From Selaginella moellendorffii (lineage: Eukaryota > Plantae > Lycopodiophyta): a stretch of 64,000 bases of DNA. The translations under genes and the position numbers were made by a program. The notes below the pieces were generated by a model. The model made no database searches, had not been told where the DNA came from, and was given only the letters and a program-made list of their open reading frames with translations. Each line of letters opens with the position of its first letter. Positions within the stretch are counted from its first letter, which is position 1. The stretch covers positions 1 through 64,000 of the forward strand of contig NW_003314267.1 of assembly GCF_000143415.4 (NCBI RefSeq), given 5' to 3'. This document shows positions 9,636 through 44,900 of this stretch, in pieces.

Positions 9636-10783
9636 TTAACAGCCATAGCGATGGGTTCTTCCCGAGTAAGCTTGTAGAGCATACGAAAGCGATGAATCGA
9701 TGTTTCTTCTCAGCTCTCCCATGTAACTGCGAATGGAGAAAAAAACTCTTTCAGGGAGATCTTGATGGAGCTTTGCGACTTACATGATTTCTGTGAGCTT
9801 GATCCTCCAGGGGGGAAAGCCTTGGACGGAGTTGATCTTGCCAAACACAAGCATGAGCTCTGGATCGGGTTTCCAGCGTCCTTGAAGAAACCAAACAAAA
9901 AAGAGGATTTTGATCGTCAAAAGCATGAAACGAAAGAGAAAAAAACTCTCTCTTTCTCACCGATTTGCTTGAGAGACTCGTTCAAGTCAGTCTCTGTGAG
10001 GCTGTTGATCCGCTCCAGCTGATCCTGCCGCGAGGAACCACGGAGGTCGTCATGGATCCTCCGCGCAGCCTCGGCAATCGCGTCTTTTCCATCGCTCATG
10101 GACAGAAGCTCCACCACCATTCTCGGTTCGCTCTTTGTTCTAATCGGATTTGATCTGGGGAAAGGGTCCACTCCGTTGGAAAAATGCTGGATCGATTACA
10201 ATGCCAACCAAGGTTTAGCAACGTAAAGTAGAAAACGGAAGAAGATACGTACGAAGTCATGCTTTAGTTGCCGTTTCCAGGTAGAAGACACGACTCTTTT
10301 CTCAAGATACGTGCCATATCTCTTCAAAATGCCTGCGTCTCTACACAAACGAGGAACTCATAAACTAAAAGTAGCAAGGAGCGACAAGCTCATCGAAAAA
10401 AATCACAACAAAAGAGATCAAACAAAAGAGAGCTAGGAAAGGAAAATCGAACCAAGGTTTAATAATCCATCCATCACAAAATCAATCGATCCAGGGAAAA
10501 AAAAGAGAGGAACCATACCTTCCATGTCGTAGAGCGCAACCTGGCGAATTCCCGCCGCCGCCAGAAAAACCAGCAGCTCCACGATCTCGTCCCGGCCCTT
10601 CCTCGCCGATTCCCCGTCCACGACAATGGCGACGACGCGGGGCTTCTTCGTCACCGATCTCCACGCGAATCGCACAGATCCGGTGGCGATGGCGATTCCA
10701 TCCAGGAATCGCTGGAGAATCGCGGCGCAGCTCGCGATCGCGTGGAGCAAATGCCACACGACCGCTGCCCACACGGCTCCCAT
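9636..10783 (-). CDS. NUS1: cis-prenyltransferase-like subunit NgBR/NUS1 (LEW1 homologue), 5 exons
   Basis: Spliced translation gives VWHLLHAI, VAIVVDGE, GIRQVALYDMEG, ELLSMSDGKDAIAEAA and PDPELMLVFG..GFPPWRIKLTEI. It ends in THRYGC*, with the NgBR RxG motif. A further 5' exon cannot be excluded. Confidence 0.9.
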
Positions 10784-30977: not shown

Positions 30978-32640
30978 AGCTCCCTCTACACTGAGATTGA
31001 TTCTCTACATACACTCCAAAGTTCTCTCTACTCCTCCATTTGCTTGGAAGGATTGGAACTCACTCACTCACCTTTGCAAAAGTCTCTGTTCTGTGACTCG
31101 TTTTTTCTTCCTTGATTGTTGCTCTTTTCTCGCTGATCTGATTGAGAGCTCGCTCGCCCCGATTGATTCTTTACAGTTTTTCTACTTTCTAGTTTGGACA
31201 GCAAGAAAGGAAGAAGAGGAGATTGTTGAGCAACGGCTGCTATGGCTAGTATGGAATGTTATTTTGAGAGCTATGCTATGGGGGAGTAAACGAGGACAGT
31301 TATCATTTATGGAAAGAAAGCTTAATACGCCTACATTACATTCATTCCTTTCTTTCTTTCTTCTTCTTGGCCTTTTAATTAATCTTCTTCTGACAATTTG
31401 TTCTTGAGATCATCGTCCACCAGAGCTCCAGGTACAAATTCAATTTTTTTCAGTTTTTACTTTTTAGCTAATTTTACCAATATTCTATTAACTAAGTATT
31501 ACTTTTTATAAATTAGTTATTGTTAATTCCTTTTGACTGGGAAGTGATTCAAGGAGACAAGTCACAGCGTAATCCAGTTTATTGCGCTCTTGACAAGTGA
31601 GATCTTAGCCAAAATAATGGAGAGTTTGATTTTGATTGATCTGGAATCTTGACAACAACTATGATTCGCAAGGCGCCTTGACTTTGGACCGGGGATACAA
31701 AACCAAAAAGAGTTAATATAACCAAAGGTGGCTATATAAATCAGAGCTTTGATCCAGGCTAGGCACGCACAGTCGTGTGTACTTCGTGGCTTGATTGATC
31801 ATGGATGTTCTTCCAGACTATTATTCACTAGTGTTTAAAAAAGGACTATTCCAGTTCCAGCCCAGCGCTCCAGCAAAATTTTGTATTTGCACCACCAAGT
31901 TGCGTGGGTTTTCCCTCCACGAGTGTCTCAAATCCGTGAAACATGGCAGGCACCTCTGGATGAAAGCACCACAAGCAAACAAAACTAGACAGAGAGAGCG
32001 AGAGGAGCGCGCGAAAAAAAGAGATAAGATGGTCTTTTGGTTCTTGAGCTACAGCTCTGAACTTAAAGCCAACCTCCTTTTCAGTTTTTCTCTTTTGTTT
32101 TTCGAGCAGTAGCAGCAGCAGCAGCAGCAGGAGCGTCAGTGGCAACAGAAGAAGCAATCAAAACAAGCAAAGCGATCAGCGAAGCCTGCAAGACGACGTT
32201 CCATACACACACCATCGACAAAGAACCGACAGCGAGGAGCTGATGACGGGGGACTCGATCTCACGCGGCAGAGCAAACAAAGGCAAAAGCAAAAGCATCC
32301 TCCAGGAAATACAAACTAAGAAAAAAAGATAGGCTAGACAAACAGTTAGAGTGGCCAGCCCAGAAAAATGGCTCCATTCAATGAGAGACCACTCTCACAT
32401 CACCATTGCGCGAATAAATACCGGACAAGGAAACCAAAACGAGAAGAACGTTAAAGAAGAACCTGTACGCGCTGCTACCAATTAAGCTTGTGATGGAGAA
32501 GTAGAACCGTAGCAGTCCTGCAGAGATGCGAGAAGAAACGTGTAAGTCATTGAGCGTTTCGTCGAGGATAGAAGAGATAAGCGAATGCGACTTACCAGGC
32601 TTCTTGCGAATCCCATGGGCCGGCTTGCTCGCTCGCTTTC

Positions 32641-33434
32641 TCACTTGGTGAGTAAGTGGACCTCTTGCTTCCGATTGACAAACTCGAAAGGACTGCTGTA
32701 CCCGGCGTAGTAGACTTTCTCGCCGTTATACTCGACGTCATCCTTGTCCAGCGCTTCTTTCAAGGCCTTGAGCCTCTTTTCGTAGTCGGGCTCGGTTGGA
32801 AAGCCTCCGAAAGGCCCGGACACCGCGTAAGTATGTTCTCTTGTCTCCAGGAACTTCACGTTCTTGTCCATGGGCTTTGGGAGGTCCTTGTGAGACTTAA
32901 ATCTGCCAAGGAGTACAACAGTAAATGTAAGCTCTGGAGAGTTCTGACGCACCTGCTTGGTGCATAGAAGGAGATTTTGTATCCTCCACGCTCCTCGTAG
33001 GGATGAACCAAGACCGGGGCAGTCATTTCTATGACCTCGCCTTTCTCATTCTTACCAGAGATGTAGTAAAAGAGACGGTAAAAGCCCACGGAAACCGCTG
33101 CCGAGTAGGATGAATTTGCAACCAGAGTCTCCACCCACACCTGATTCGTAAGAAAAAGAAAAAAAAAATTGTTCTGTTAGTAGAAGAACAAGTCAAGGAA
33201 AAACAAAAGGCAAGAGTTGTTACAGACCTGTCCCTTGGGATACTTGCGGAGCTCGTAGCCGTTCTTCCTTGCCTCGATCTTGCAATGCGGGGTCTCAATT
33301 GAGAGCTTGGGTCCACAACTCTCAGAGCCTTCAGCTGAATAGAGCTCCACAACCTGTTCAAACCCACTGGAAGGAGCAGCAACCGCGGTGCTCGCGATTG
33401 TCAGCGCGACGAACAATACTACAAGCCTGGCCAT
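32641..33434 (-). CDS. SOUL heme-binding family protein with signal peptide, 3 exons
   Basis: IETPHC..YELRKY, GFYRLFYYISGKN, IEMTAPV, AGYSSPFEFVNRKQEV. Hydrophobic N-terminus MARLVVLFVALTIA. Confidence 0.93.
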
Positions 33435-33581
33435 CCTGTCTTGCCACAAACTTCTCCGCAAAATCTTGATCTTTAAACTATTTTAGAACCGTTATCTACA
33501 CGTGGATGCTGGAGAGCCAGCCACCTGACTACCCTTGCTACAAGACGTGGCGAACAGAGCAAGGGAATTCTTACCCGTTTA

Positions 33582-35939
33582 CTAACTTACTGTAGCCACG
33601 TAGGAACCGTCTATGCACTTGATCTGTCTGATCGACCCCGAAGCGAATGTTGAAGCCCGACCGAAGCCCAACTCGTTACATGCAGCTTCCTCGTGAAGCT
33701 GCGCGATGTTGAGACCTTCGCTGAGTGGCTCTGTAGTGAAACTAAAAGAACCAGATCTTGTTTCAGTTTGGTGCTCAAAAAAACTAAAAGGAACTACTTA
33801 CCTTACTTCAAAAGTCTCTTTGTGGAGCCTCCTCAAGGCAACACACAGCCTGGAAATCACCCATGGTGCCAAGCACGTAGCTTTTATCTCAAGGCTATAC
33901 GAGTTGTTCGTGGACACGGCAGATCCGTCAATGACCTGCATCTGCTTACTGCACACCTGCAGCTTTCACGTCAATAAACATGATGCATTGGACTGGTCGA
34001 TGCAAAAACACCTGCCTCGGGGACTTTCAACGATGCGTTATGAAAGGGAACTGGGGAATAGAGTACAGGTACATCAGCACGAGTCATGCTTCCCACAAAA
34101 AATCTGGCAGAAAGTTCCTCAATGTGACGTACATCATAAGCACGCATACCTGTAGTTCAACAGGAAATCATACAGGCGGTGGACGCTTTGGCTTCCGTTA
34201 AAAGCTAGCAGAGATTGGACGCTATTGTCAACTGCAGCCATCGAGTCCACCAGTCGTGTCTGTTAATTTTTCAGCAAAAGTCACCTCCCGTTTCATATCA
34301 AAACTTGTCAAAACTACCTGCCCAGGATTCAACTTCTCAAACTCAGAGAGTTCTTGAAGCTCTTCTGCTGACGCAGGCTTTGAGTCCAGTTTGCACAAAG
34401 GCATTGAAAAGCTTACACCCTTGTCAAGAAGTTTGACAAGTTTCACGATATACATTTAAAGAATGAGCATACATACTTGTTTTTGAAGAAGAGCACGAAG
34501 TCCACGAGTTGACCGTGAGAGATACGCACAAATTTGCTCCTGTGATCTTCCGCACAAGAATGCTACTACAAATTGGGAACCACAAACTGCACGAACGGCA
34601 GATTAAAACGTGGACAGAAATGACACCTTACAGTAAAAAATGTTGCAGAGCTTGTTCCGGAATGCATAGTACAGAGAATGAAACGAATCTTCCCAGTCAC
34701 GTTGTCTTTGTTCCAAAAACGAGTTTCCTGCTAAAACAAAAGAAGAAAGGAAGAAATCAGCTGACTTTCGCAGAAACTGAAAAAGAACAATACCAGCGCG
34801 AGCTGCGGGTGACATTAAGGCAGAAAGAACTTCTGGAGGAAATGAAAGCTGAGGGTAAACCCAGGAATGCAAGCCTTTCCAGAAATCACTTTCGACTTCT
34901 GACGCTTTGTGACCGTGTGGATTTTCTACGCCTAGACCAGATTCTATAAACTCCTTCAACCCTTGAAACTGATTTTGTACACCAAACCTATGGCACCTGT
35001 GATCAGAAGCATAAACCTTAACACCAAACCGGAAAAGCATAACGACCGAAAGCTCACCAGTGAAACGATGTACAGGAAAGAAAACGAGCAGTAAGCTTTA
35101 GAGTGAGATCTAGTGGCAATACTGGAAGCTTTTTCGTCCTCTGGTTGTCAAATTCAGCAGGCGCGGATGAAGACCTGCTAATTGGACGAGGAACTTTCTC
35201 AGGCGCCTTGATCACTGCAAGAGCTTTTATAGCTTCCGCCTGTTCAAAGGGATGTTAGTTGAAACACGAAACTGAAAAACAAAAACTACCATGTCCACGG
35301 CTGGAGACGCTTGTGGCTGCTGTATTCTACAAGAAAGCTCAGCGACATTCTTGAACTTTGAATTGCTCGTCGATGCCTCTCCTTGATTCCTGCACAGAAA
35401 CTCAACTTTGAAACTCAGAAAAACTAACAGCACAAAGAAAAGAATCATCACTTACTGCTTAATTTCTTTCCCTTTTGTAGAGTGTTCGTCCTATATAAAT
35501 GTATCCTCTTTAAGTTCTAGCGATCGAAGAGAACACGAGAACTTACTTTGTATTTGGACAAGCTAAACTTGGGCTTTTCAGCAGACTTGGTAGGAGCACA
35601 CACATCCGAAGCGCGCGTCTCAGAAAACCTCGGCGGCTTTGGTGCGTCGGGCCTGTCAAAAACCAAAAAAAAAAAAAAACAAAAAAGCAAAGCATCTCAT
35701 CCATGACGCTTGAAATATCCAAATGCCGCTTGCGTACCTTTGCGCTGAGCCAGCATCCTGGCTATTGGCACGTTTGAGTTGCTCGCGCTACAGATCCGAT
35801 TAGCATCATCTCACGAAAGAAGAAACGGGGGACAAATTCTTACCCGCAGTTCCGACGGAGTCTTGCGCTTGCCTAGCGATGGCGATGCATCGCTCTCGGC
35901 ACCAGAAGCAGCACGATCCGCACCCCCCCGCCATTCCAT
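33582..35939 (-). CDS. DONSON: DONSON (downstream neighbour of SON) homologue, multi-exon
   Basis: Spliced translation gives KRKTPSELR.EQLKR, LHSWVYPQ, W.DSF.SLYYAFR..LCNIFY, AYLSRSTRGLR.LL, GVSFSMPL, V..LYDFLLNY and DVPVLYSPVPF. Stop TAG at 33582-33584. Confidence 0.88.
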
Positions 35940-36189: not shown

Positions 36190-37035
36190 TGAATTTTACC
36201 TCCATTCAAGGCGGAGCCAGGCGAGTGACTGCTGCAAGCCTGACGAGAATGACCATCAGGCACAGAAAAGCGCAAATGCAAACGAAATACTCACCCAAGA
36301 CTTGAACATACTGTTCACATCCTGCCTTGATCCACAGACTCATGAACTGCAAAAGAAAAACCCAAGGAGATGAGAGAAGGAACCAACGAACCGAAGCACC
36401 ACGACTTCTTCTCCTGGTTTGTATCTTGGCACTCTCGTCCAGCACTTAGCACCAGTGTATATGTTGACCATGAGCACGTACGCCATATCGAGCTCCAGAA
36501 ATGACTCAAAGGCAATCCTCCCCGATAGAAGTCCCAGTGCAAAAAAGAAATGTTACTTCCAAACTTGATAAAAATCTCCTTTGGTAGTGACAATTAGAAA
36601 CTAGAAAGCTCACTGGAAATCTCACACTCTTGCAAAAAAGCTTCGTCATCGGAGAAACACGATCTAGACACAAAGCGGATGCCTCAGGACTAGAGAGCTG
36701 TTTTAATACACCAAATAATACGTGCAAAGCTACTGTAAAACCTCAAACCTTGACTTAGCTCGAGTTGAAAACCAAGCAAGCATCATTGGCACCCGGCTAT
36801 GCTTTTCCACTGCTTGTGTTTGATCCACACACTCGGCTCTTTGGCACTGTCCTTAGCGTCAAGGCCTGGAAAAACTAGTATTTGCCAGATCGAGAGAGAG
36901 AGATCAACAAAGTTTTGATCTCGAAACAAACATCGAATCGATCATCTCACAGGCATTGTAGCTACAAGAAAGAAAAAAGGCGAAAGATCATAAGCACGCT
37001 CCTTGAAGGCAACAGATTCGTGGCCATTTCCATCC
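36190..37035 (-). pseudogene. Small multi-exon gene or pseudogene of unknown family
   Basis: A series of short exon-like blocks is bounded by GT/AG and pyrimidine tracts. I could not assemble a confident continuous frame or find a known motif. Confidence 0.3.
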
Positions 37036-37059
37036 CTCTGTTCAAGGCCCAGACTTTCA

Positions 37060-37260
37060 CTATCTAGTTGCTGCTGCCAACTTCATTGCTTCTTCGTTCG
37101 CAGCCAGGTTTGAACAATTCGGCTCACAGCCCGAGGCTTGCATTTGCTGAAGTAAATCCAGAGCTACGTTGCCTTGGCCATTGTTAGCATATCCCAGGAT
37201 GAGAACATTCCGAAGAACGAAGTCGGGGCTGTGGACTTTGTACATGTACTTGAAGTGTGG
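37060..37260 (-). pseudogene. Pentatricopeptide-repeat (PPR) gene fragment
   Basis: PDFVLRNVLILGYANNGQGNVALDLLQQMQASGCEPN resembles one PLS-class PPR motif (PDVVSWN.LI.GYA.NG....AL.L...M...GC.PN). Truncated on both sides. Confidence 0.75.
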
Positions 37261-39361
37261 GAAAATGGAATTATCTTTTGCAATGGTGTCTTGTAGAACT
37301 GTCTCATATCCGGGTATGATGAGCACTAAGAAGATCTCAACGGAGCACTGCAGCTGTCTGTAACAATGGTCTCCTCCTCCAACTGTGAGTGCACCATTGA
37401 ACTTTTATTGTTGCATTGATGGACTGGTAGCGAGGGGATGTTCCAGCTTCCCTCAGGTCAAGTTGACCATTGTGACTCTTGAATGTTAACTGTGTCCCTT
37501 CCTTTTTCTTATTTTTGTCAATAAAATTGGCAGTGCCTAGGCATAGAGCCAGCAGTGGGTGGCATTTCAGAATCTTGGCTTTGTTTTTTTTCTAGGTTGT
37601 GAAGAAGATAGCATATTATCCTTAAAAGTATAGTTATAGAAAGTCCAAATATAATTCTACATCATTAAGGAATGATCGAAAGCAATCTAAACTTATTGTT
37701 GGTATATAAAACTTAGAATCATATGTTATTTACATTCAGTTTCAAAATTGTGATTTTGAGAATTATATGTTAGCTACATTAAAAACTGTATTATGTTTAA
37801 ATTTCAAATTTGGCATCAGAGAATTATATGAAATTTATTTTACAAACCAAAATATGTTCCAATTTCAAAACTATGCTTGAGAAAATCATGTCGAACCTAT
37901 GTACACTGTTGAAAACCCATATCCAGCTAGTTTTCTTTTTCCAAACCATATTGTATTTTCAAAGATTCACATAAAAAACCATTGTGAAGAAAGATCAACA
38001 CCATTTGAAGGTTGAAGGCAGCATACAGCACTCCTAAAAATATAGTTTTAACAGATTCACTTTGAAAGATCTAGAGGATCCTAGAGAATCATGCATTCTT
38101 CAAGCCTTAACTCCCTCACCAGGCAGATTTTGTTGGACGAGCACAATGTCACTTCTTATAGCTTGGGGCCGCGCATATGGCATGCATTAAGCGCTCATGG
38201 CGCACGTTCATTGCATTCCTACCCGGATGCTGAAAAGATATTCTTCACAACGGTCGATACCGGTCAAACAAAGAAGTCAAACTTTGGCACAAGCAAAGCA
38301 GCAAAAATATTTTCGTTTTACTATCAATGGTTTGATTTGTGGAGCGTTTTCTTCTTCTTTAGTGGCACCCGCGAAAAATCTTAAAATTTTGTGACGGTGG
38401 TCAGTTAGGTCATCGATCGATCAATCGTTTCCTCTTCTTTTATATCTCGTGATCCAGCCTCTTCCAGTTTCTCTTCTTGTTGTTCATATACTCAAGAGAC
38501 TTGGAACTTGACAGCAAAAGCTCTAAAAGATGGTGTTCTATCTGAGAGGTTTTGATTTCTAATTTTGATATTCTTTTTGAGCTTTCTAACTTGCCATTTG
38601 TTCTTGAAGCCCTTCTCGCATTGGTAACCGGGTGAACACTTGATGAGAGGAGCCATTTCCGCCACTCTCAATGCCACCTAAAGTGGCCTTGAAAACCAAC
38701 CTCGAAGTTGACCTCCGACATGATTCCAGCCTCTTTAGATCATGGATAAAAATCTAGCAAGATCATGGATAAACATCTAGACAGCGGCCGTAGGTTTTGG
38801 GATTCTGTATTATAGACGACTGAAGGAAAAATCTGTTTTCCAAAGGTTGAAAAAGGAAATGCCGAGAATTTCTTTCTTTGTTCTCCAAATGGTGCAAAAA
38901 TGTTGATTAAGCTAAATTACAAGCTAAAGGCAAAAAATATCAGCACTTATATAGTAATGCCGGAACCCAGCTCGCAATGTTGTGGAACAGCAGAGCCGAT
39001 CAGTCAGCACCTATTGAGACACACATCACTGGACACCCCAGACAAGTCATTGGAGGCTGACGAAGATTCCATTGTGGACACACTCGCCATCTGAGGTGGT
39101 ATCGTCTTCAGCTCCCCATGGTTGATTGGAATTGGAGGCCAAGATTGCGAGGAGAGGAGCACAAAGGGCGAGAGCTCGTTTCAAAAATCTGGCGCTGAAG
39201 TGCAATGAGATTGATTTTCTTTTATTGCCAATGGTTTGCCTCCAATAAACTACGAAGATAAATAGGCACCCCTTCATCCTTAACACTTTGGGTTCCCCTT
39301 CATTGAGCTCTGGATATAATCATTCTTTTACCTTAAACACAACCTTAATAACTCACGCTAT

Positions 39362-40720
39362 TCAAAGTCCATGGCCATGTCGCGCTAAAACGTCCTTCAT
39401 AGCATGAAAGTACGGCATGGACATTGCCATAACAACAGGAAATCCTCCTTTGTACCAGGCAAGATCCGTGCCTCCCCACTCCCCAATGTCCCTGTAATGG
39501 GCAAAGTTGTGCATTATGAGGCTCTTGAGAGCTTGCTCCGACACTCCCGCTGCCAAGACCTCAGCTTCGGAGACCACACCAGACCCTGCAGTGATCATTC
39601 CCAGGAGCTGAAGGTACTCCTCCTTCGTCCACAAAGGCTTGGTCTCAGCTAGAGCAGCATCAGTAGAACCTCCTAAAGCAGGCCTTTTCCACTTTGCACT
39701 TACGGAGTGTGGGCGGCAGCCTAGCAACATCTCGTTGTAAAGCGCGCTGTGGAGTGACACCATGTAGGAGTTCCACGTCTGCTTCATCTCCGCCTCGGCT
39801 TCCCTGCTCCTCTCCTTCATATCTGCACCTTTAACCATGAGACAAGCCAGATGTGGAGATAGCTTGGCTGCTACTCTGTCCAGCAGTAGCATCCTCCCGC
39901 CAACATAGCCGTGTATCTCTTCCCACAAGGCCTGAGGAAACACGTAATCCTTGACGCTGGGACAGTAATACTCCCACGGCGACGTCAGCCCCCTCATGAA
40001 AAACTCAAATGACTCTTCGTCTCCGAGATCGCCAACCACCGCCACAGTAAACCTCTCTCGCCCTACCCTGTTTCCCATCCATATCCGGAAAGAGTCCTCG
40101 GAGCTGGCTAACACCACATTTGCCAGCTTCTTCTGCTTCGTGATCATCACCAACCACTCTTGAAGCGTCGCCAGATTCTCCTGCTCTTCACGACTAGCGC
40201 TCCACTCGTAAAGCCTGTTCGCCTCGTCTATGATCAGTGTGGGGAATGCCGCGGCCACTCCATGCGTAAACCCAGTGAAAGACGCTTTGACCGTGCTGAA
40301 CAAGGCTTCCAGTCGCTCAAGTAGAATCGTCATATTGTCCGGACTAGCAGCCTCGACATGTTGGACAGCCTCCTTCAAAGCTTGTCCAGTTTCCTTCTCT
40401 ACCTCTTCAGGAATCTCAACACCTACGGCAGCCTTCAATCCCTCACTGACCACACGCGATATCAGAGGGACGGCGGATTTGGCCTTGAGCTCCCTGCTGA
40501 AGCTAGCTGCAGTGTTGAACTTTCCCGCGCGCATATCGATGAGGATTGGGAATCCCTTTTGCTCTGCCTGCATCCTTTCCTTAAACTCGGACAGCAATGC
40601 CGACTTGCCAGAGTTCGGAGGTCCTGTAAGCACTAGCAGCTCACCATTTCCCGCCGTTTCGAGACGACCAAGCTCCAGCGCTCGGTTGTAGAAAAATGGG
40701 GCAATCCGCCGCCGCGCCAT
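39362..40720 (-). CDS. Archaeal-ATPase-like (STAND-type) P-loop NTPase, intronless, 452 aa
   Basis: N-terminal FYNRALEL (the F.DRE.EL motif), Walker A GPPNSGKS, Walker B LIIDEAN, sensor strand VVLASSE, helical-domain YVGGRMLLL and a winged-helix-like C-terminus. First ATG at 40720. Confidence 0.85.
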   Translation of the reverse strand: MARRRIAPFFYNRALELGRLETAGNGELLVLTGPPNSGKSALLSEFKERMQAEQKGFPILIDMRAGKFNTAASFSRELKAKSAVPLISRVVSEGLKAAVGVEIPEEVEKETGQALKEAVQHVEAASPDNMTILLERLEALFSTVKASFTGFTHGVAAAFPTLIIDEANRLYEWSASREEQENLATLQEWLVMITKQKKLANVVLASSEDSFRIWMGNRVGRERFTVAVVGDLGDEESFEFFMRGLTSPWEYYCPSVKDYVFPQALWEEIHGYVGGRMLLLDRVAAKLSPHLACLMVKGADMKERSREAEAEMKQTWNSYMVSLHSALYNEMLLGCRPHSVSAKWKRPALGGSTDAALAETKPLWTKEEYLQLLGMITAGSGVVSEAEVLAAGVSEQALKSLIMHNFAHYRDIGEWGGTDLAWYKGGFPVVMAMSMPYFHAMKDVLARHGHGL

Positions 40721-40749
40721 CCTAAATTCCAAAACCCTATTTCTGAAAG

Positions 40750-43700
40750 CAATTTATAGACCTTTAAAGTTTAAACTCGCGTCAAATTTTATCAACTTTT
40801 AGGCTCCTGGACACCACTCCTAATTCCCAAACTTACTTTGGGGTTTTCCTCAGATGGCAACTCCAAAGCTGTTCCAATTCCTCCTGGTTAGTGTGAGGGG
40901 ATCCTGGCAAGTAATCTGGAATCACGTCCTTTAGGCTGCATCCACATGCAAAAGACCATGGCTCCTCCATCGAAGCTGCTGAAAGTGGTAACGATAATGG
41001 ATGAGCATGTAGCCTAAATCTAAAATGGATGGCCGAAGGGGAAACTGCTTGTAACTGTGTCTTTCTTCGGTGTTTAAAAGGTGTGTTAAGAAATGGGCGG
41101 GTCCAGAGTGGCGACCAATCAGCAAGTCAAGTTTGTGCTGCTGCTGCTATAGAGAGGATTGGGTGAGGGTAATTCCCAACTCATTCTCATGACAAATTCC
41201 AAGACTCCACATTTTGCTTTACCCTCGATGGAGAATATTCCTCCTCTAAAATTTATGGAGTCTTTCAATAGGTGACCACGAAGGATTGCATTAGGCTTTG
41301 CTATGTGAGAACCCACGATGTTAAAGAAGTCATATTGAAGACTTCTACCAAATACTTAGAAAAAAGCAAGTGCAAAAGTTGAGAAATATGGAAGTAAAAC
41401 AAAGGAAAGATGAAAAATGGAAAGAAAGATGAGAAGAAAGTGCTGTAGAGTTTAGGGTTAGAGGGAAACTCTAAGCATAAACTACACAGCAAAAAATAGA
41501 AGTAGCAAGAGAGAAGGTAAAAAGCAAGGTGATTCAAATGAAAACAAACTCTTAGTGAATATGCAAATGCATCATCCTTAAGTTAGTCATTGTCAGAACC
41601 TTGGTCAAAATGTGGCTAGAAAGCAAAGAAATACTCTTGTCAATTGGTGGTAAGTGTAAAAGTGAAAATGGATGCATGAAAATGATGTGATGGTGTGGTC
41701 AAGTGTGATGGCGGCTTCTAATGAGAGAAAGTGAGCTGGTCTTAAACCAGGTTAAGCAGCTCCAAACAATAGCAATCTTTGTTGCAATGCTGTTAGAAGT
41801 GTGGCAATTGTCCACTAAACATTAGAGGAGATAGAAGAGGGTGTCAGCTGTTATGTCTACACCAAAGAGTCCACCTAGTTGCCTGGGGTACCAAGTTCAA
41901 CTGGTTGGAAGAATATACTTGCTCTATAAAATCCACAAGCCTAGAAATGAACAAAGAAGATTGAGAGCAAAAAAAGAAAAATAAAAAAGAAAGAGAAAGA
42001 AAAGATCTCACCACAAAGGTGGTGAAGATGGCCAGCCAGAATAATAGATGAAACTGGGTCTAACATGATGAAGAAATGCTGAAACTTGTGAGAGAAGAGC
42101 CATTGATATGGGGGCAATTGTAGATTGTTGGGGAGTGGGGGTATCTTTGCCTGCCCCTTTGTAGGTGGCTAATGGCTCATGGATGTGGCTCACATCCCAA
42201 TCAGGCAACCATGGTGGACTGAGCATGTTTGTAGCATGAAGAGAACTCTCAACCTTCAAAAGTTGAATGTGATGTCTGGTTTGGGGAACTACAGAAAACT
42301 GGAGAAACCAAAACGAAGTAAAGAAACAAAAGAAATAGAAGAGGGATAGAGTTTGGAGTCACAAAGAAAACCATATAAATTATGAATGCGAAGTCTAGAA
42401 AAAATAATAGGAGAAAACCAAAATGCAAGGTGTGAAGAAGTAATAGGTGACAAGAGAATTATAGGAAAGTGAATGGGAACCAAAGCTAGAAGAAGAGTGC
42501 TCACCTAGATCACAGCCTTGTGGGCTCGTAACCCTCCAAACAGTTTCTTAAATTGCCCAAGTTGCATGGAAGGATGAGAGAAATATGTGCCCTAGATTTG
42601 GATGAGAGAAAAGTGTGGATGTTGGTAAAAAGTAGTGGAGGGGATTGTGGATGTCAGGATTGGTAGCCACGGTATTATAATGTTTTGTGCTTTTGAATTA
42701 TTATTATAACTAGCTGCAAAACTTTCTGAAAAAGAGGTGGCAAGTACACCATCTGTCCAATGTGTCTAGGCTCCTATGTGTACATCAGGTCCAACTAGCT
42801 GCAGAATATTAGCTTCTAGAGTTGAGATTCTACAAGACACTCAGCTTTCCCAGAATCTCTCCTGGACCAGAACATTTGCCATGCAAGCCAAAGTCCAAGA
42901 CCTTGATGCAAAAGATTGAGAGCTCCATTCATTGAGTTGAAGGTAGATACAAAGGTGGTGATGCTGGAAGTGAAATCAGAAGAGAAAGGAGTTGCCTCAA
43001 CTGAGTATATCAGTGCTATTAGCTAATGAGAAGTCCTTCTGGATAAAGATGTTATAACCTAGTATCATAGAGCCAAGCTGTTGATAGTATAACATGACAA
43101 TGTCAAGTATTGAAAATTGAATGCCATGGCAAATGTCTGTAGGAACTATAGTGAGTAGCTTCCTTGAAGATGATGTTGTTGCCGAGTGTGGACCGTTCTT
43201 TAACTCATGAGTTCAAGAATTAAGCTCAATTTTTAAGTGTCGTATAGTTTTAATTTTTAAAAATTAAGATATTTTTTATATTATATATTTAGAAAATTTT
43301 CACTTTATATAGATAAAAATGTAGAAGAGACTTCTTAGAATTTAAATATTTACTATGTATAATAATAGATAAGTTAGAATATAAAATAAGATAGTATTTA
43401 TTTGTTAAAAAAGTAATTTGTCAACTTCCTTAGAATCCATACTATGTGCTTTTTGGTTTTTTAAATATCAATTTTGTCAGAATTTAAAAATTATAAAATT
43501 TAAAATAAGATTCTTTTGCAAAGCTATATAACATTTAAAAGGTAAAAATAAATTATTGATATAAACTTATTTGCATATAAAAGGGATACTCAATTATTCT
43601 TTGAAATATATTATTGAAGGGAATAAATTCAATATTATGTCTAGGAAGGATCCACTAGTATTATCCTAAACAACTACAAATTAGCCTATTTACCACTCAT

Positions 43701-44900
43701 GACAAACTCAAAGGAGGTTTACTTTTATCTATAGTTGTATGAGTTTACGTGTATAAGGCACATTAGCAACTTGATATTACAATTTGAGGTACTTAAATTA
43801 TCATATTGCCCAATCTCATTGGATAGTATTTGCTAAAATTAATGTTCTAATACTAAATATATGGTTTTTATAATATACCTTATGGTGAATTATCATAGGA
43901 TAACCACAAAAAAGAACCTAATCCTTAAATCCATGGGAACCTGAGTTTCATGGTATTAGGAAGGAATTTTTAATGCAAAGGAGGGAAAAGAATTAGGAGT
44001 ATAAAGTAACATTAGAATAGTTGTAGAGTATCTAGAATCCTAAGACTAAGTCTAATATATAAAATGGAATGAAATGAAATTTAATATTTTTTTAGTACGC
44101 AATTCCAGTGGTATAGAGGTTAGGCTTATACTCAATCTAAATGCAAAATAAAAATAAACAACCTCAAGTGATCTCCCATGCCACACCTATTTACTATCCT
44201 TATTATATATTTTGAATTCTATAGTCCTTTCCTCCCCTATATGAAAGCTCATTTTGGCCTTTCACCCCAATCCTTCAAGATAGTTTTTGGGATAAATTCA
44301 AAAAATTAATAAATATGGAATGGTTTTATATTTTGAAATTGGATACATGAATAACACTATAGTGTCCATTATTTACATTTTTTAAATATAGTATGTTTGG
44401 ATAAATAATCACTTCTTTCCTTATGCTTATGCAGCCAAAACTTAGTTTATTAAAACAAAAAAGACTAAGAAAGGAACTAACAATACTAATATCCTATTGT
44501 TGTGGTAGTATGAAAAAAATATCCAAAATGACTCATTAACAAGGTAATCTCAATATCCATAGTTTTGATTCCTTAGCAGTTACCTAGGTTTATTATCATT
44601 ATTATTATTCTTCTCCAGTGGAAGGGAAAAATGATCTAGCCTAGATTGGCTAAGATCTCACCAATGCTCCATGAGGGAGGGAAGAATAACATCAACTAGG
44701 CCATACAATTAAGCAATTGCCCCTTTAAAAGTTTGATCTGATCTTCATGATGATGGTTAGATTGAATCAGCTAAAAGTAATACCAACACTTCAACCTCAA
44801 GAAACAAAGAAGTAAGGACTATTGGCTCAATAGATTGTATAATAAATCAGTGATAAGATGTCTAAGCTCAATAATGCTTGAGATATTACCTTGTAATCTA
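40750..44900. other. AT-rich intergenic block, probably decayed TE or pseudogene debris
   Basis: No intact ORF. CpG-poor, with stop-ridden protein-like patches at about 40900-41330 and 42700-43200. Family not identifiable. Confidence 0.35.

What the first reader, a model, noticed from the sequence alone, without database searches (positions are those of the whole stretch)
39362..40720. Intronless stand-alone archaeal-type (STAND-like) ATPase in an accessory pocket
The ORF is intact and has the motif set of the prokaryotic Arch_ATPase/ATPase_2 group: F.NR..EL, Walker A GPPNSGKS, hhhDEA, hhh.SS, GG.M in place of GxP, and a winged-helix-like tail. It has no N-terminal effector and no C-terminal sensor repeats. 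It lacks introns, whereas the housekeeping genes here are intron-rich. It is flanked by a PPR fragment, pseudogenes and TE debris. I do not recognise it as a standard angiosperm gene. It is a candidate horizontally acquired or lineage-expanded minimal NLR-like switch (inference).
Basis: partly seen in the sequence, partly recalled or inferred. Interest (0 to 1): 0.7.

Follow-up and report, generated by a model that had tools for sequence, protein, structure and literature searches.

The report
Spikemoss stand-alone archaeal-type ATPase gene
This is a real, intact gene of the spikemoss Selaginella for a small ATP-driven switch protein of the little-studied "archaeal-type ATPase" family; it was inherited within the green lineage and multiplied in spikemosses, it did not arrive recently from a microbe, and its function is untested.

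Summary
The ORF is real: 452 aa, minus strand, 39362-40720. The genome is Selaginella, not an angiosperm. The orthologue SELMODRAFT_415937 lies in the same gene order in the S. moellendorffii reference. dN/dS between the two copies is 0.29, so the protein is under constraint.

A confident AlphaFold model shows an AAA+ core, a helical lid and a winged helix, with nothing else attached. The best structural matches are the archaeal ATPase_2 proteins 2qen and 2fna (Z 22-24). Plant NLR NB-ARC modules (Z about 17) and ORC/Cdc6 (Z 14-16) follow.

An exhaustive profile search found 483 representative proteins. The named ones include at least 12 Selaginella gene models, Adiantum ferns, green algae, Tribonema, Amoebozoa and a chlamydial MAG. 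In the tree, the lycophyte and fern sequences form one clade (98/98) next to green algae. The fern and algal homologues have introns.

Recent horizontal transfer is therefore not supported, but expansion within Selaginella is. Calling it NLR-like is fair for the fold only. Expression could not be tested. Whether seed plants have the family also remains open. The scan had already noted paralogues of this family on other pieces of this genome.

The parts
39362..40720 (-). Complete intronless CDS, 452 aa plus TGA stop, of an ATPase_2-family protein. It is the orthologue of S. moellendorffii SELMODRAFT_415937.
   Evidence: 96% protein identity to P0001. dN/dS 0.29.
40025..40693 (-). AAA+/P-loop alpha-beta core, aa 10-232. 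It includes a five-helix insertion (aa 71-149) between strands b2 and b3.
   Evidence: AF2 model secondary structure. Pfam ATPase_2 covers aa 10-244.
40670..40693 (-). N-terminal FYNRALEL motif, aa 10-17. R13 and E16 are conserved in 48 and 46 of the 50 aligned family members.
40601..40624 (-). Walker A GPPNSGKS, aa 33-40. G38 and K39 are present in every aligned member.
40220..40237 (-). Walker B LIIDEA, aa 162-167. D165 is in 61 of 62 members and E166 in 53 of 61.
40097..40117 (-). End of strand b4 with the sensor-1-position motif VVLASSE, aa 202-208. S207 is in 57 of 60 members, and position 208 is acidic in 57 of 60.
39716..40021 (-). Helical lid domain, aa 234-335. It holds the GG motif (G274, G275; 39890-39904 covers VGGRM) in place of GxP.
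39371..39643 (-). C-terminal winged-helix domain, aa 360-450. N405, R410 and D419 are conserved across the family.
   Evidence: DSSP topology H366-378, E382-384, H385-390, H395-403, E408-410, E429-431. Structural alignments reach residues 443-452. Conservation.
40837..40970 (-). Upstream segment that serves as coding exon 1 in the reference gene model P0001. Here it is out of frame because of a 7-nt deletion, so it is not conserved as coding sequence. It could be 5' UTR or an annotation artefact.
37060..37326 (-). Isolated PPR-repeat ORF fragment of 88 aa, downstream of the gene. It is context only and not part of the gene.
   Evidence: It overlaps a segment (37026-37241) that is inverted relative to the reference.

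Best explanation
The ORF is a functional nuclear gene of Selaginella. It encodes a stand-alone member of a eukaryote-centred subfamily of the ATPase_2 ('archaeal ATPase', PF01637) family. That family belongs to the ORC/Cdc6-STAND assemblage of AAA+ NTPases.

Shown:
- The protein consists only of an AAA+ nucleotide-binding core, a helical lid and a C-terminal winged helix.
- Its Walker A and Walker B motifs are intact.
- Purifying selection acts on it.
- It lies in conserved synteny.
- It belongs to a family that is expanded in Selaginella and shared with ferns, green algae, a stramenopile alga, Amoebozoa and a few host-associated bacteria.

Inferred:
- It binds and hydrolyses ATP and works as a nucleotide-dependent conformational switch. 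The lid and winged helix would close on or release the nucleotide site, controlling self-assembly and/or binding of a partner. That partner may be nucleic acid bound through the winged helix, as in ORC/Cdc6.
- The gene descended vertically within the green lineage. It duplicated repeatedly in the Selaginella lineage, and this copy's clade lost its introns.
For: - Identity: Pfam ATPase_2 above its cut-off; 58 of 62 family members hit ATPase_2; the family profile hits 2fna at 4.5e-12 and 2qen at 5e-8.
- Fold: the model has pLDDT 89.4 and pTM 0.89. VIA Z is 23.6 to 2qen and 22.1 to 2fna over the whole chain, about 17 to NLR NB-ARC and 14-16 to ORC/Cdc6. Foldseek ranks the same families in its top hits, 2qen first.
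- Conserved catalytic residues.
- Constraint: 17 synonymous and 17 non-synonymous differences from the reference orthologue, dN/dS 0.29, binomial p 5e-4. GC3 is 0.61 against flank GC of 0.39-0.40.
- Host gene: the locus is collinear at 94-97% with S. moellendorffii GL377594.1 and has the same neighbours, LEA_2, DONSON/SOUL and BTB-NPH3.
- Distribution: 483 representatives at E<=1e-3; names.
- Tree: land-plant clade 98/98; green side against the amoebozoan and bacterial side 100/99.
- Introns in the Adiantum and Trebouxia homologues.
Against: - No transcript evidence. Three RNA-seq runs gave zero reads on 38600-41600, but about 12% of each run was read and no control stretch was laid. One small run gave two exact 151-nt contigs of unknown library type.
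- A follow-up on a paralogue elsewhere in this genome judged that copy silent (s1-380702).
- No biochemical data exist for any family member, so the switch mechanism is inference from fold and motifs.
- No arginine finger is conserved across the family. R223 is Arg in only 25 of 62 members, so ring-type AAA+ hydrolysis is uncertain.
Three unnamed Streptophyta clusters in the ESM Atlas remain unresolved.
Confidence: 0.72

Rival explanations
1. Recent horizontal transfer: Selaginella acquired the gene directly from an archaeon or bacterium, which would explain the missing introns and the 'archaeal' domain.
For: The CDS is intronless. The Pfam family is mostly prokaryotic. The best solved structures are archaeal.
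Against: - The nearest relatives are other Selaginella genes, then ferns and green algae.
- Fern and algal homologues have introns within the conserved region.
- A pattern scan of 185,579 prokaryotic species genomes, made with the bacterial-like branch of the family, confirmed only two MAG loci, Parachlamydiales and a Gammaproteobacterium.
- The ORF's composition lies within the range of neighbouring genes.
- Synteny is conserved between two assemblies.
Confidence: 0.03
2. Ancient inter-domain transfer: the whole eukaryotic subfamily arose through exchange with intracellular bacteria such as Chlamydiae, or was donated by eukaryotes to them. In that case the patchy eukaryotic distribution reflects several transfers, not vertical descent with losses.
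For: - Family members lie in gene-dense bacterial contigs: a Chlamydiales MAG next to ribosomal protein L28 and a dihydrolipoyl-dehydrogenase-like gene; a contig with Glyco_transf_9, GPD and MscS genes; and Parachlamydiales and Gammaproteobacteria MAGs.
- These sit in one clade with eukaryote-like contigs and next to Amoebozoa.
- Tribonema, a stramenopile, is nested among green algae.
Against: - The tree is unrooted, so direction cannot be told.
- The land-plant sequences form one well-supported clade beside green algae, which vertical descent explains most simply for this gene.
- The MAG contigs are short (3-11 kb), so mis-binned contigs are possible.
Confidence: 0.15
3. Silent young duplicate or retrocopy: the ORF is still intact but is not expressed and is on its way to becoming a pseudogene.
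For: - Zero reads in three RNA-seq runs.
- The gene is intronless, while a paralogue model (P0003) differs from its locus by an 18-codon gap that may be a small intron.
- It lies in a 12-kb stretch without other called genes and next to a PPR fragment.
- Earlier notes on this genome describe silent or truncated copies of the family (s1-380702 and s1-422230).
Against: - dN/dS is 0.29, with the ORF intact in both the window and the reference despite dS of 0.057.
- All catalytic motifs are retained.
- The RNA result is explicitly 'no test', because no control stretch was laid.
Confidence: 0.13
4. Minimal NLR-like immune switch: a bare NOD module that oligomerises on a danger signal and signals through partner proteins.
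For: - The three-domain module superposes on the NBD-HD1-WHD of plant resistosome NLRs (WRR4A, RPP1, NRC4) with Z about 17 over 290-306 residues.
- Family expansion, and tandem arrays elsewhere in the genome (s1-422230), recall immune gene families.
- R410 in the winged helix is conserved in 53 of 58 members. It could sense nucleotide as the MHD histidine does in NLRs; this is inference.
Against: - No NB-ARC, NACHT or TIR match was found at E<=1.
- Matches to PADLOC defence models are weak and cover only the P-loop or short stretches of the core.
- There is no effector or sensor domain.
- The sensor-1 position has Ser, not the STAND Arg, and the GxP motif is absent.
- dN/dS of 0.29 shows no sign of diversifying selection.
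- Archaeal ATPase_2 proteins match clearly better than NLRs.
Confidence: 0.08

Closest known systems
Archaeal ATPase_2 proteins with solved structures: PABY2304 of Pyrococcus abyssi (2qen) and SSO1545 of Sulfolobus solfataricus (2fna)
   Same: Same Pfam family. The family profile hits both. The full-length three-domain superposition has Z 23.6 and 22.1 over 315-320 residues. They share the N-terminal F.(N/D)R..E motif, Walker A and B, and Ser at the sensor-1 position.
   Different: Sequence identity is only 16-17%. The plant protein is about 100 residues longer, with a large helical insertion (aa 71-149), and has GG in place of GxP. It belongs to a eukaryote-centred subclade. The archaeal proteins themselves have no assigned function.
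SELMODRAFT_415937 (EFJ... hypothetical protein, S. moellendorffii), the annotated orthologue
   Same: 96% protein identity, the same flanking genes and collinear DNA.
   Different: The reference model adds 48 N-terminal residues from an upstream exon. That exon is frame-shifted in the window, and its acceptor lies in a 12-nt segment that is absent here. There are also a 3-residue indel and a 2-residue difference at the C-terminus.
Yme2/RNA12 (PF10443), a fungal mitochondrial inner-membrane protein with an RRM and an AAA+ domain
   Same: 18 of 62 family members match RNA12, five of them above its cut-off, and the matches run from Walker B through the lid into the winged-helix region. The shape match has TM 0.61. 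The Yme2 AAA+ domain was likewise found most similar to ORC/Cdc6-type initiators (PMC9284673).
   Different: The window protein itself does not match RNA12 at E<=1. It has no presequence, transmembrane helix or RRM. It keeps the canonical hhhhDE Walker B, whereas Yme2 has hhhhDR (PMC9284673).
STAND NTPases / plant NLR NB-ARC module
   Same: NBD-helical-WHD architecture with Z about 17 to the WRR4A, RPP1 and NRC4 resistosomes. STAND NTPases are placed in the same Cdc6/Orc clade of AAA+ (PMC8195603, citing Leipe et al. 2004).
   Different: No NB-ARC or NACHT profile match, no effector or repeat domains, no sensor-1 Arg and no GxP or GLPL motif.
ORC/Cdc6 replication initiators
   Same: AAA+ core, lid and C-terminal winged helix; Z 14-16; Foldseek probability 1.0.
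   Different: About 10-13% identity, no conserved arginine finger, and nothing that links it to replication.

Membership tests
Pfam ATPase_2 (PF01637, 'ATPase domain predominantly from Archaea') | Profile score above the curated gathering cut-off | tested here: met
   47.1 bits against 33.2, E 3.3e-12, aa 10-244. 58 of 62 relatives also match.
Pfam ATPase_2 (PF01637) | N-terminal F.(D/N)R..E motif, Walker A GxxxxGK[ST], Walker B hhhhDE, and small polar residues at the end of strand b4 | tested here: met
   FYNRALEL, GPPNSGKS, LIIDEA and VVLASS are all present and conserved in the family alignment.
Pfam ATPase_2 (PF01637) | Three-domain fold of the solved members (AAA+ core, lid, winged helix) | tested here: met
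   VIA Z 23.6 (2qen, chain 1-350) and 22.1 (2fna, chain 0-356), covering model residues 6-443.
STAND NTPases (as defined by Leipe et al. 2004; recalled from my own knowledge and from PMC8195603) | NBD-helical-WHD module | tested here: met
   Structural match to NB-ARC modules with Z about 17 and to CED-4 with Z 14.5.
STAND NTPases | Profile match to a STAND family (NB-ARC, NACHT, nSTAND) | tested here: not met
   No such Pfam hit for the window protein at E<=1. Only 8 of 62 relatives give weak nSTAND1 hits and 2 of 62 give NACHT hits.
STAND NTPases | Sensor-1 arginine after strand b4 and a GxP motif in the helical domain | tested here: not met
   SSE at aa 206-208 and GGRM at aa 274-277. The family consensus is S-S-D and G-G.
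STAND NTPases | Fusion to effector and/or repeat sensor domains | tested here: not met
   The three core domains fill all 452 aa.
AAA+ initiator clade (ORC/Cdc6) | Conserved arginine finger between strands b4 and b5 for inter-subunit hydrolysis | tested here: inconclusive
   R223 is present here and invariant in Selaginella clade A, but it is Arg in only 25 of 62 family members.
RNA12/Yme2 (PF10443) | Profile score above the cut-off | tested here: not met
   No hit for the window protein at E<=1. Algal and amoebozoan relatives do pass, at 28-44 bits against a cut-off of 27.
Known anti-phage defence ATPases (PADLOC) | Significant full-length match to a defence-system model | tested here: not met
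   Only weak matches to the P-loop or short stretches of the core, with E 3e-4 or worse.

The most novel reading that the evidence does not exclude
The gene represents an undescribed, ancient eukaryotic family of bare NOD-type (NBD-lid-WHD) ATPases. In this reading the family is specifically related to the AAA+ module of the mitochondrial protein Yme2. It survives as a stand-alone protein in green algae, Amoebozoa, ferns and lycophytes, was lost from seed plants, and expanded in Selaginella. The stand-alone module would act as a nucleotide-gated assembly switch, in organelle biogenesis or in defence. That would make it a natural minimal version of the STAND/NLR engine.
Probability: 0.15. Interest if true: 0.55.

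Novelty: new member of a known kind. Interest (0 to 1): 0.3.

Why it matters
This is a modest finding. It removes a tempting claim of horizontal transfer and of a minimal NLR. It replaces that claim with a documented picture: an uncharacterised eukaryotic branch of the ATPase_2 family with a complete NBD-lid-winged-helix module. Among named land-plant hits the branch was seen only in seed-free vascular plants, and it has multiplied in Selaginella. If seed plants truly lack it, it becomes one more marker of gene loss at the origin of seed plants. The link of its relatives to the Yme2/RNA12 profile offers a lead on the origin of a poorly understood mitochondrial protein. No function is known for any member of the family, archaeal or eukaryotic, so any biochemical result would be new.

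Tried and rejected
- Word-index protein search, with the single protein and with an 18-sequence alignment. It returned only four hits each because P-loop words filled the candidate list. The exhaustive profile search was needed.
- The search for related loci with the broad alignment A2 failed for lack of a conserved stretch. The run with A4 found only two MAG loci.
- RNA evidence.
- Literature. Searches for PF01637, Arch_ATPase, the phrase 'predominantly from Archaea', six SELMODRAFT identifiers and the SRA run numbers found no paper on this plant family. The only plant mentions seen or apparent from the titles concerned NLR or resistance genes; one was read, a Populus gene annotated 'Arch_ATPase//LRR_8'.
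- PADLOC and NCBIfam gave only weak, mostly P-loop-level matches.
- Direct PDB sequence search with the single protein gave nothing useful.
- TE debris. No repeats, no Rfam hits and no TE domains were found in the flanks.
- RecA concatemer hits in the PDB profile search are artefacts of repeated P-loops.
- Organisms behind unnamed Logan and ENA hits could not be resolved. I used gene density to judge contigs as bacterial or eukaryote-like.

Full report
**Observation**

The window holds a single long open frame on the minus strand at 39362-40732. Its first ATG is at 40720, which gives a 452-aa product ending at a TGA. An in-frame TAA lies 12 codons upstream of the ATG (read).

Pfam places aa 10-244 in ATPase_2 (PF01637) at 47.1 bits, above the 33.2-bit cut-off. 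AAA_22 is also above its cut-off, and AAA_16 falls just below. NCBIfam, PADLOC and a single-sequence PDB search add only weak, mostly P-loop-level matches.

All of them are conserved in a 62-sequence family alignment: R13 and E16 of F.NR..E, G38 and K39, D165 and E166, S207, and G274 and G275.

**Which genome**

The best protein hit is SELMODRAFT_415937 of Selaginella moellendorffii, at 96% identity. The 22 kb around the gene is collinear with reference scaffold GL377594.1 at 94-97% nucleotide identity. The neighbours are the same in both: LEA_2, a 222-aa ORF, the ATPase, a DONSON/SOUL model, and BTB-NPH3.

The window therefore comes from S. moellendorffii or a very close relative. It is a lycophyte, not an angiosperm.

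**Gene structure**

The reference gene model adds 48 N-terminal residues through an upstream exon. In the window that exon carries a 7-nt deletion that shifts the frame. The 12-nt segment holding the model's splice acceptor is also absent. A paralogue (P0003) starts at the same MARR. The conserved CDS is thus the uninterrupted 452-aa frame.

**Is it a live gene?**

Against the reference orthologue there are 17 synonymous and 17 non-synonymous differences. This gives dS 0.057, dN 0.017 and dN/dS 0.29, with a binomial p of 5e-4 against neutrality. GC3 is 0.61 and lies within the range of neighbouring genes, while the flanks are 39-40% GC.

Transcription could not be tested. One small run of unknown library type held two exact 151-nt contigs.

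**Structure**

An AlphaFold2 model built on the 62-sequence alignment is confident, with pLDDT 89.4 and pTM 0.89. It shows three parts:
- a five-stranded AAA+ core with a helical insertion at aa 71-149;
- a helical lid at aa 234-335;
- a C-terminal winged helix at aa 366-448, with H-S-H-H-S-S topology.

Foldseek and VIA-align both rank the two solved archaeal ATPase_2 proteins first. 2qen scores Z 23.6 and 2fna Z 22.1, each over its whole chain. The NBD-HD1-WHD modules of plant resistosome NLRs follow at Z about 17, archaeal ORC/Cdc6 at Z 15-16, eukaryotic ORC subunits and TnsC at about 14-15, and CED-4 at 14.5.

The family profile also finds 2fna (4.5e-12) and 2qen (5e-8) by sequence. By shape in the ESM Atlas the nearest clusters are Basidiomycota ATPase_2 proteins (TM 0.72), bacterial and archaeal ATPase_2 (0.64-0.67) and fungal Yme2/RNA12 (0.61).

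**Family and distribution**

An exhaustive profile search of 1.84 billion representatives found 483 proteins at E<=1e-3 and 168 at E<=1e-10. I looked up 30 of them by name, and others by their contigs. They include:
- at least 12 S. moellendorffii gene models;
- the ferns Adiantum capillus-veneris and A. nelumboides;
- the trebouxiophytes Coccomyxa, Myrmecia, Trebouxia and Nannochloris;
- the chlorophycean Tetradesmus;
- the xanthophyte Tribonema;
- the amoebozoans Physarum and Arcella;
- a Chlamydiales MAG.

A pattern scan of one genome per prokaryotic species, made with the branch of the family that holds the Chlamydiales protein, confirmed only a Parachlamydiales MAG and a Gammaproteobacteria MAG. 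Two members lie in gene-dense bacterial contigs. Two others lie in sparse, eukaryote-like contigs.

**Phylogeny**

A maximum-likelihood tree was built from 58 full-length rows under LG+C20, with long-branch rows and near-duplicates left out as listed. The window protein pairs with its reference orthologue (100/100). That pair sits inside a Selaginella clade (100/99). This clade joins a second Selaginella clade and the fern sequences in one land-plant clade (98/98). The clade groups with green algae and Tribonema, against an amoebozoan, bacterial and protist side (100/99).

The tree is unrooted, so the deep origin and the direction of any bacterium-eukaryote exchange cannot be told.

The Adiantum gene spans 6.7 kb and has at least three introns. 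The Trebouxia gene has introns inside the ATPase domain. Together with the synteny, this argues for long residence in green-lineage genomes and against recent acquisition by Selaginella.

**Relation to Yme2**

Eighteen of the 62 family members match Pfam RNA12. Five algal or amoebozoan members do so above the cut-off, and their matches extend from Walker B through the lid towards the winged helix. The window protein itself does not match.

The published Yme2 study likewise found that protein's AAA+ domain to resemble ORC/Cdc6-type initiators (PMC9284673). I treat this as a lead, not as family membership.

**Mechanism (inference)**

Walker A and B are intact, a polar residue occupies the sensor-1 position, and the lid and winged helix are conserved. 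The protein most likely binds and hydrolyses ATP and uses the nucleotide state to gate a conformational change. That change would in turn gate self-association or partner binding, as in its structural relatives.

No arginine finger is conserved across the family (R223 is Arg in 25 of 62 members). R64, next to strand b2, and R410, in the winged helix, are conserved in more than 90% of members. I could not inspect the coordinates to see which of them faces the nucleotide.

**Context**

The PPR fragment at 37060-37326 is real. It overlaps a segment (37026-37241) that is inverted relative to the reference. I found no TE domains, repeats or Rfam families in the flanks.

**Earlier notes of this scan**

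Several paralogues of this family, and tandem arrays built from it, were flagged on other pieces of the same genome. One follow-up reached a similar verdict for another copy. I did not test those loci myself.

**Verdict**

The gene is a lineage-expanded, vertically inherited member of a known but uncharacterised ATPase family. It is neither a recent foreign gene nor a demonstrated immune switch.

Noticed in passing
Relatives P0014, P0089, P0125, P0155, P0008: Algal and amoebozoan members of the family pass the Pfam RNA12 (Yme2) cut-off, with matches running from Walker B into the lid and winged-helix region. This suggests that the AAA+ module of the fungal mitochondrial protein Yme2 is related to this stand-alone eukaryotic family.
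   Followed up: partly
L003, L009, L010, L012: Family members occur in Chlamydiales and Parachlamydiales MAGs, a Gammaproteobacteria MAG and another gene-dense bacterial contig. They fall in a clade that also holds eukaryote-like contigs and lies next to Amoebozoa, which hints at gene exchange between intracellular bacteria and protist hosts.
   Followed up: partly
window 37026-37241 and 41710-42051: Two small segments are inverted relative to S. moellendorffii scaffold GL377594.1. Identity drops to about 85-88% in 37242-39234 and 43070-43735, against 94-97% elsewhere.
   Followed up: no
window 40718-40722 against L001 about 10253-10264: The reference carries an extra 12 nt (ATGGCGCAGCTT) directly upstream of the start codon. 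It looks like a partial duplication of the start region, and it creates both an alternative ATG and the splice acceptor used by the reference gene model.
   Followed up: yes
L011 (S. moellendorffii GL377585.1), gene model P0071: This 527-aa paralogue model matches the family profile in five separate stretches, and tblastn shows overlapping internal repeats. It looks like an internally duplicated or mis-modelled tandem copy.
   Followed up: no
window about 32400-35900 (-); L001 15299-18592: The downstream neighbour in the reference is a single 732-aa model that combines DONSON and SOUL haem-binding domains. This is an unusual pairing and may be a fused annotation of two genes.
   Followed up: no
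P0008 (Coccomyxa sp. Obi, 892 aa): The ATPase_2 module occupies only the C-terminal half (aa 414-814). The 400-residue N-terminal half has no Pfam match at E<=1e-4.
   Followed up: no
ESM Atlas clusters: Three unnamed Streptophyta-only clusters (85, 53 and 67 members; 521, 453 and 494 aa) score 0.96-0.97 by language-model features. Their species make-up could not be seen, so relatives outside lycophytes and ferns remain possible.
   Followed up: no
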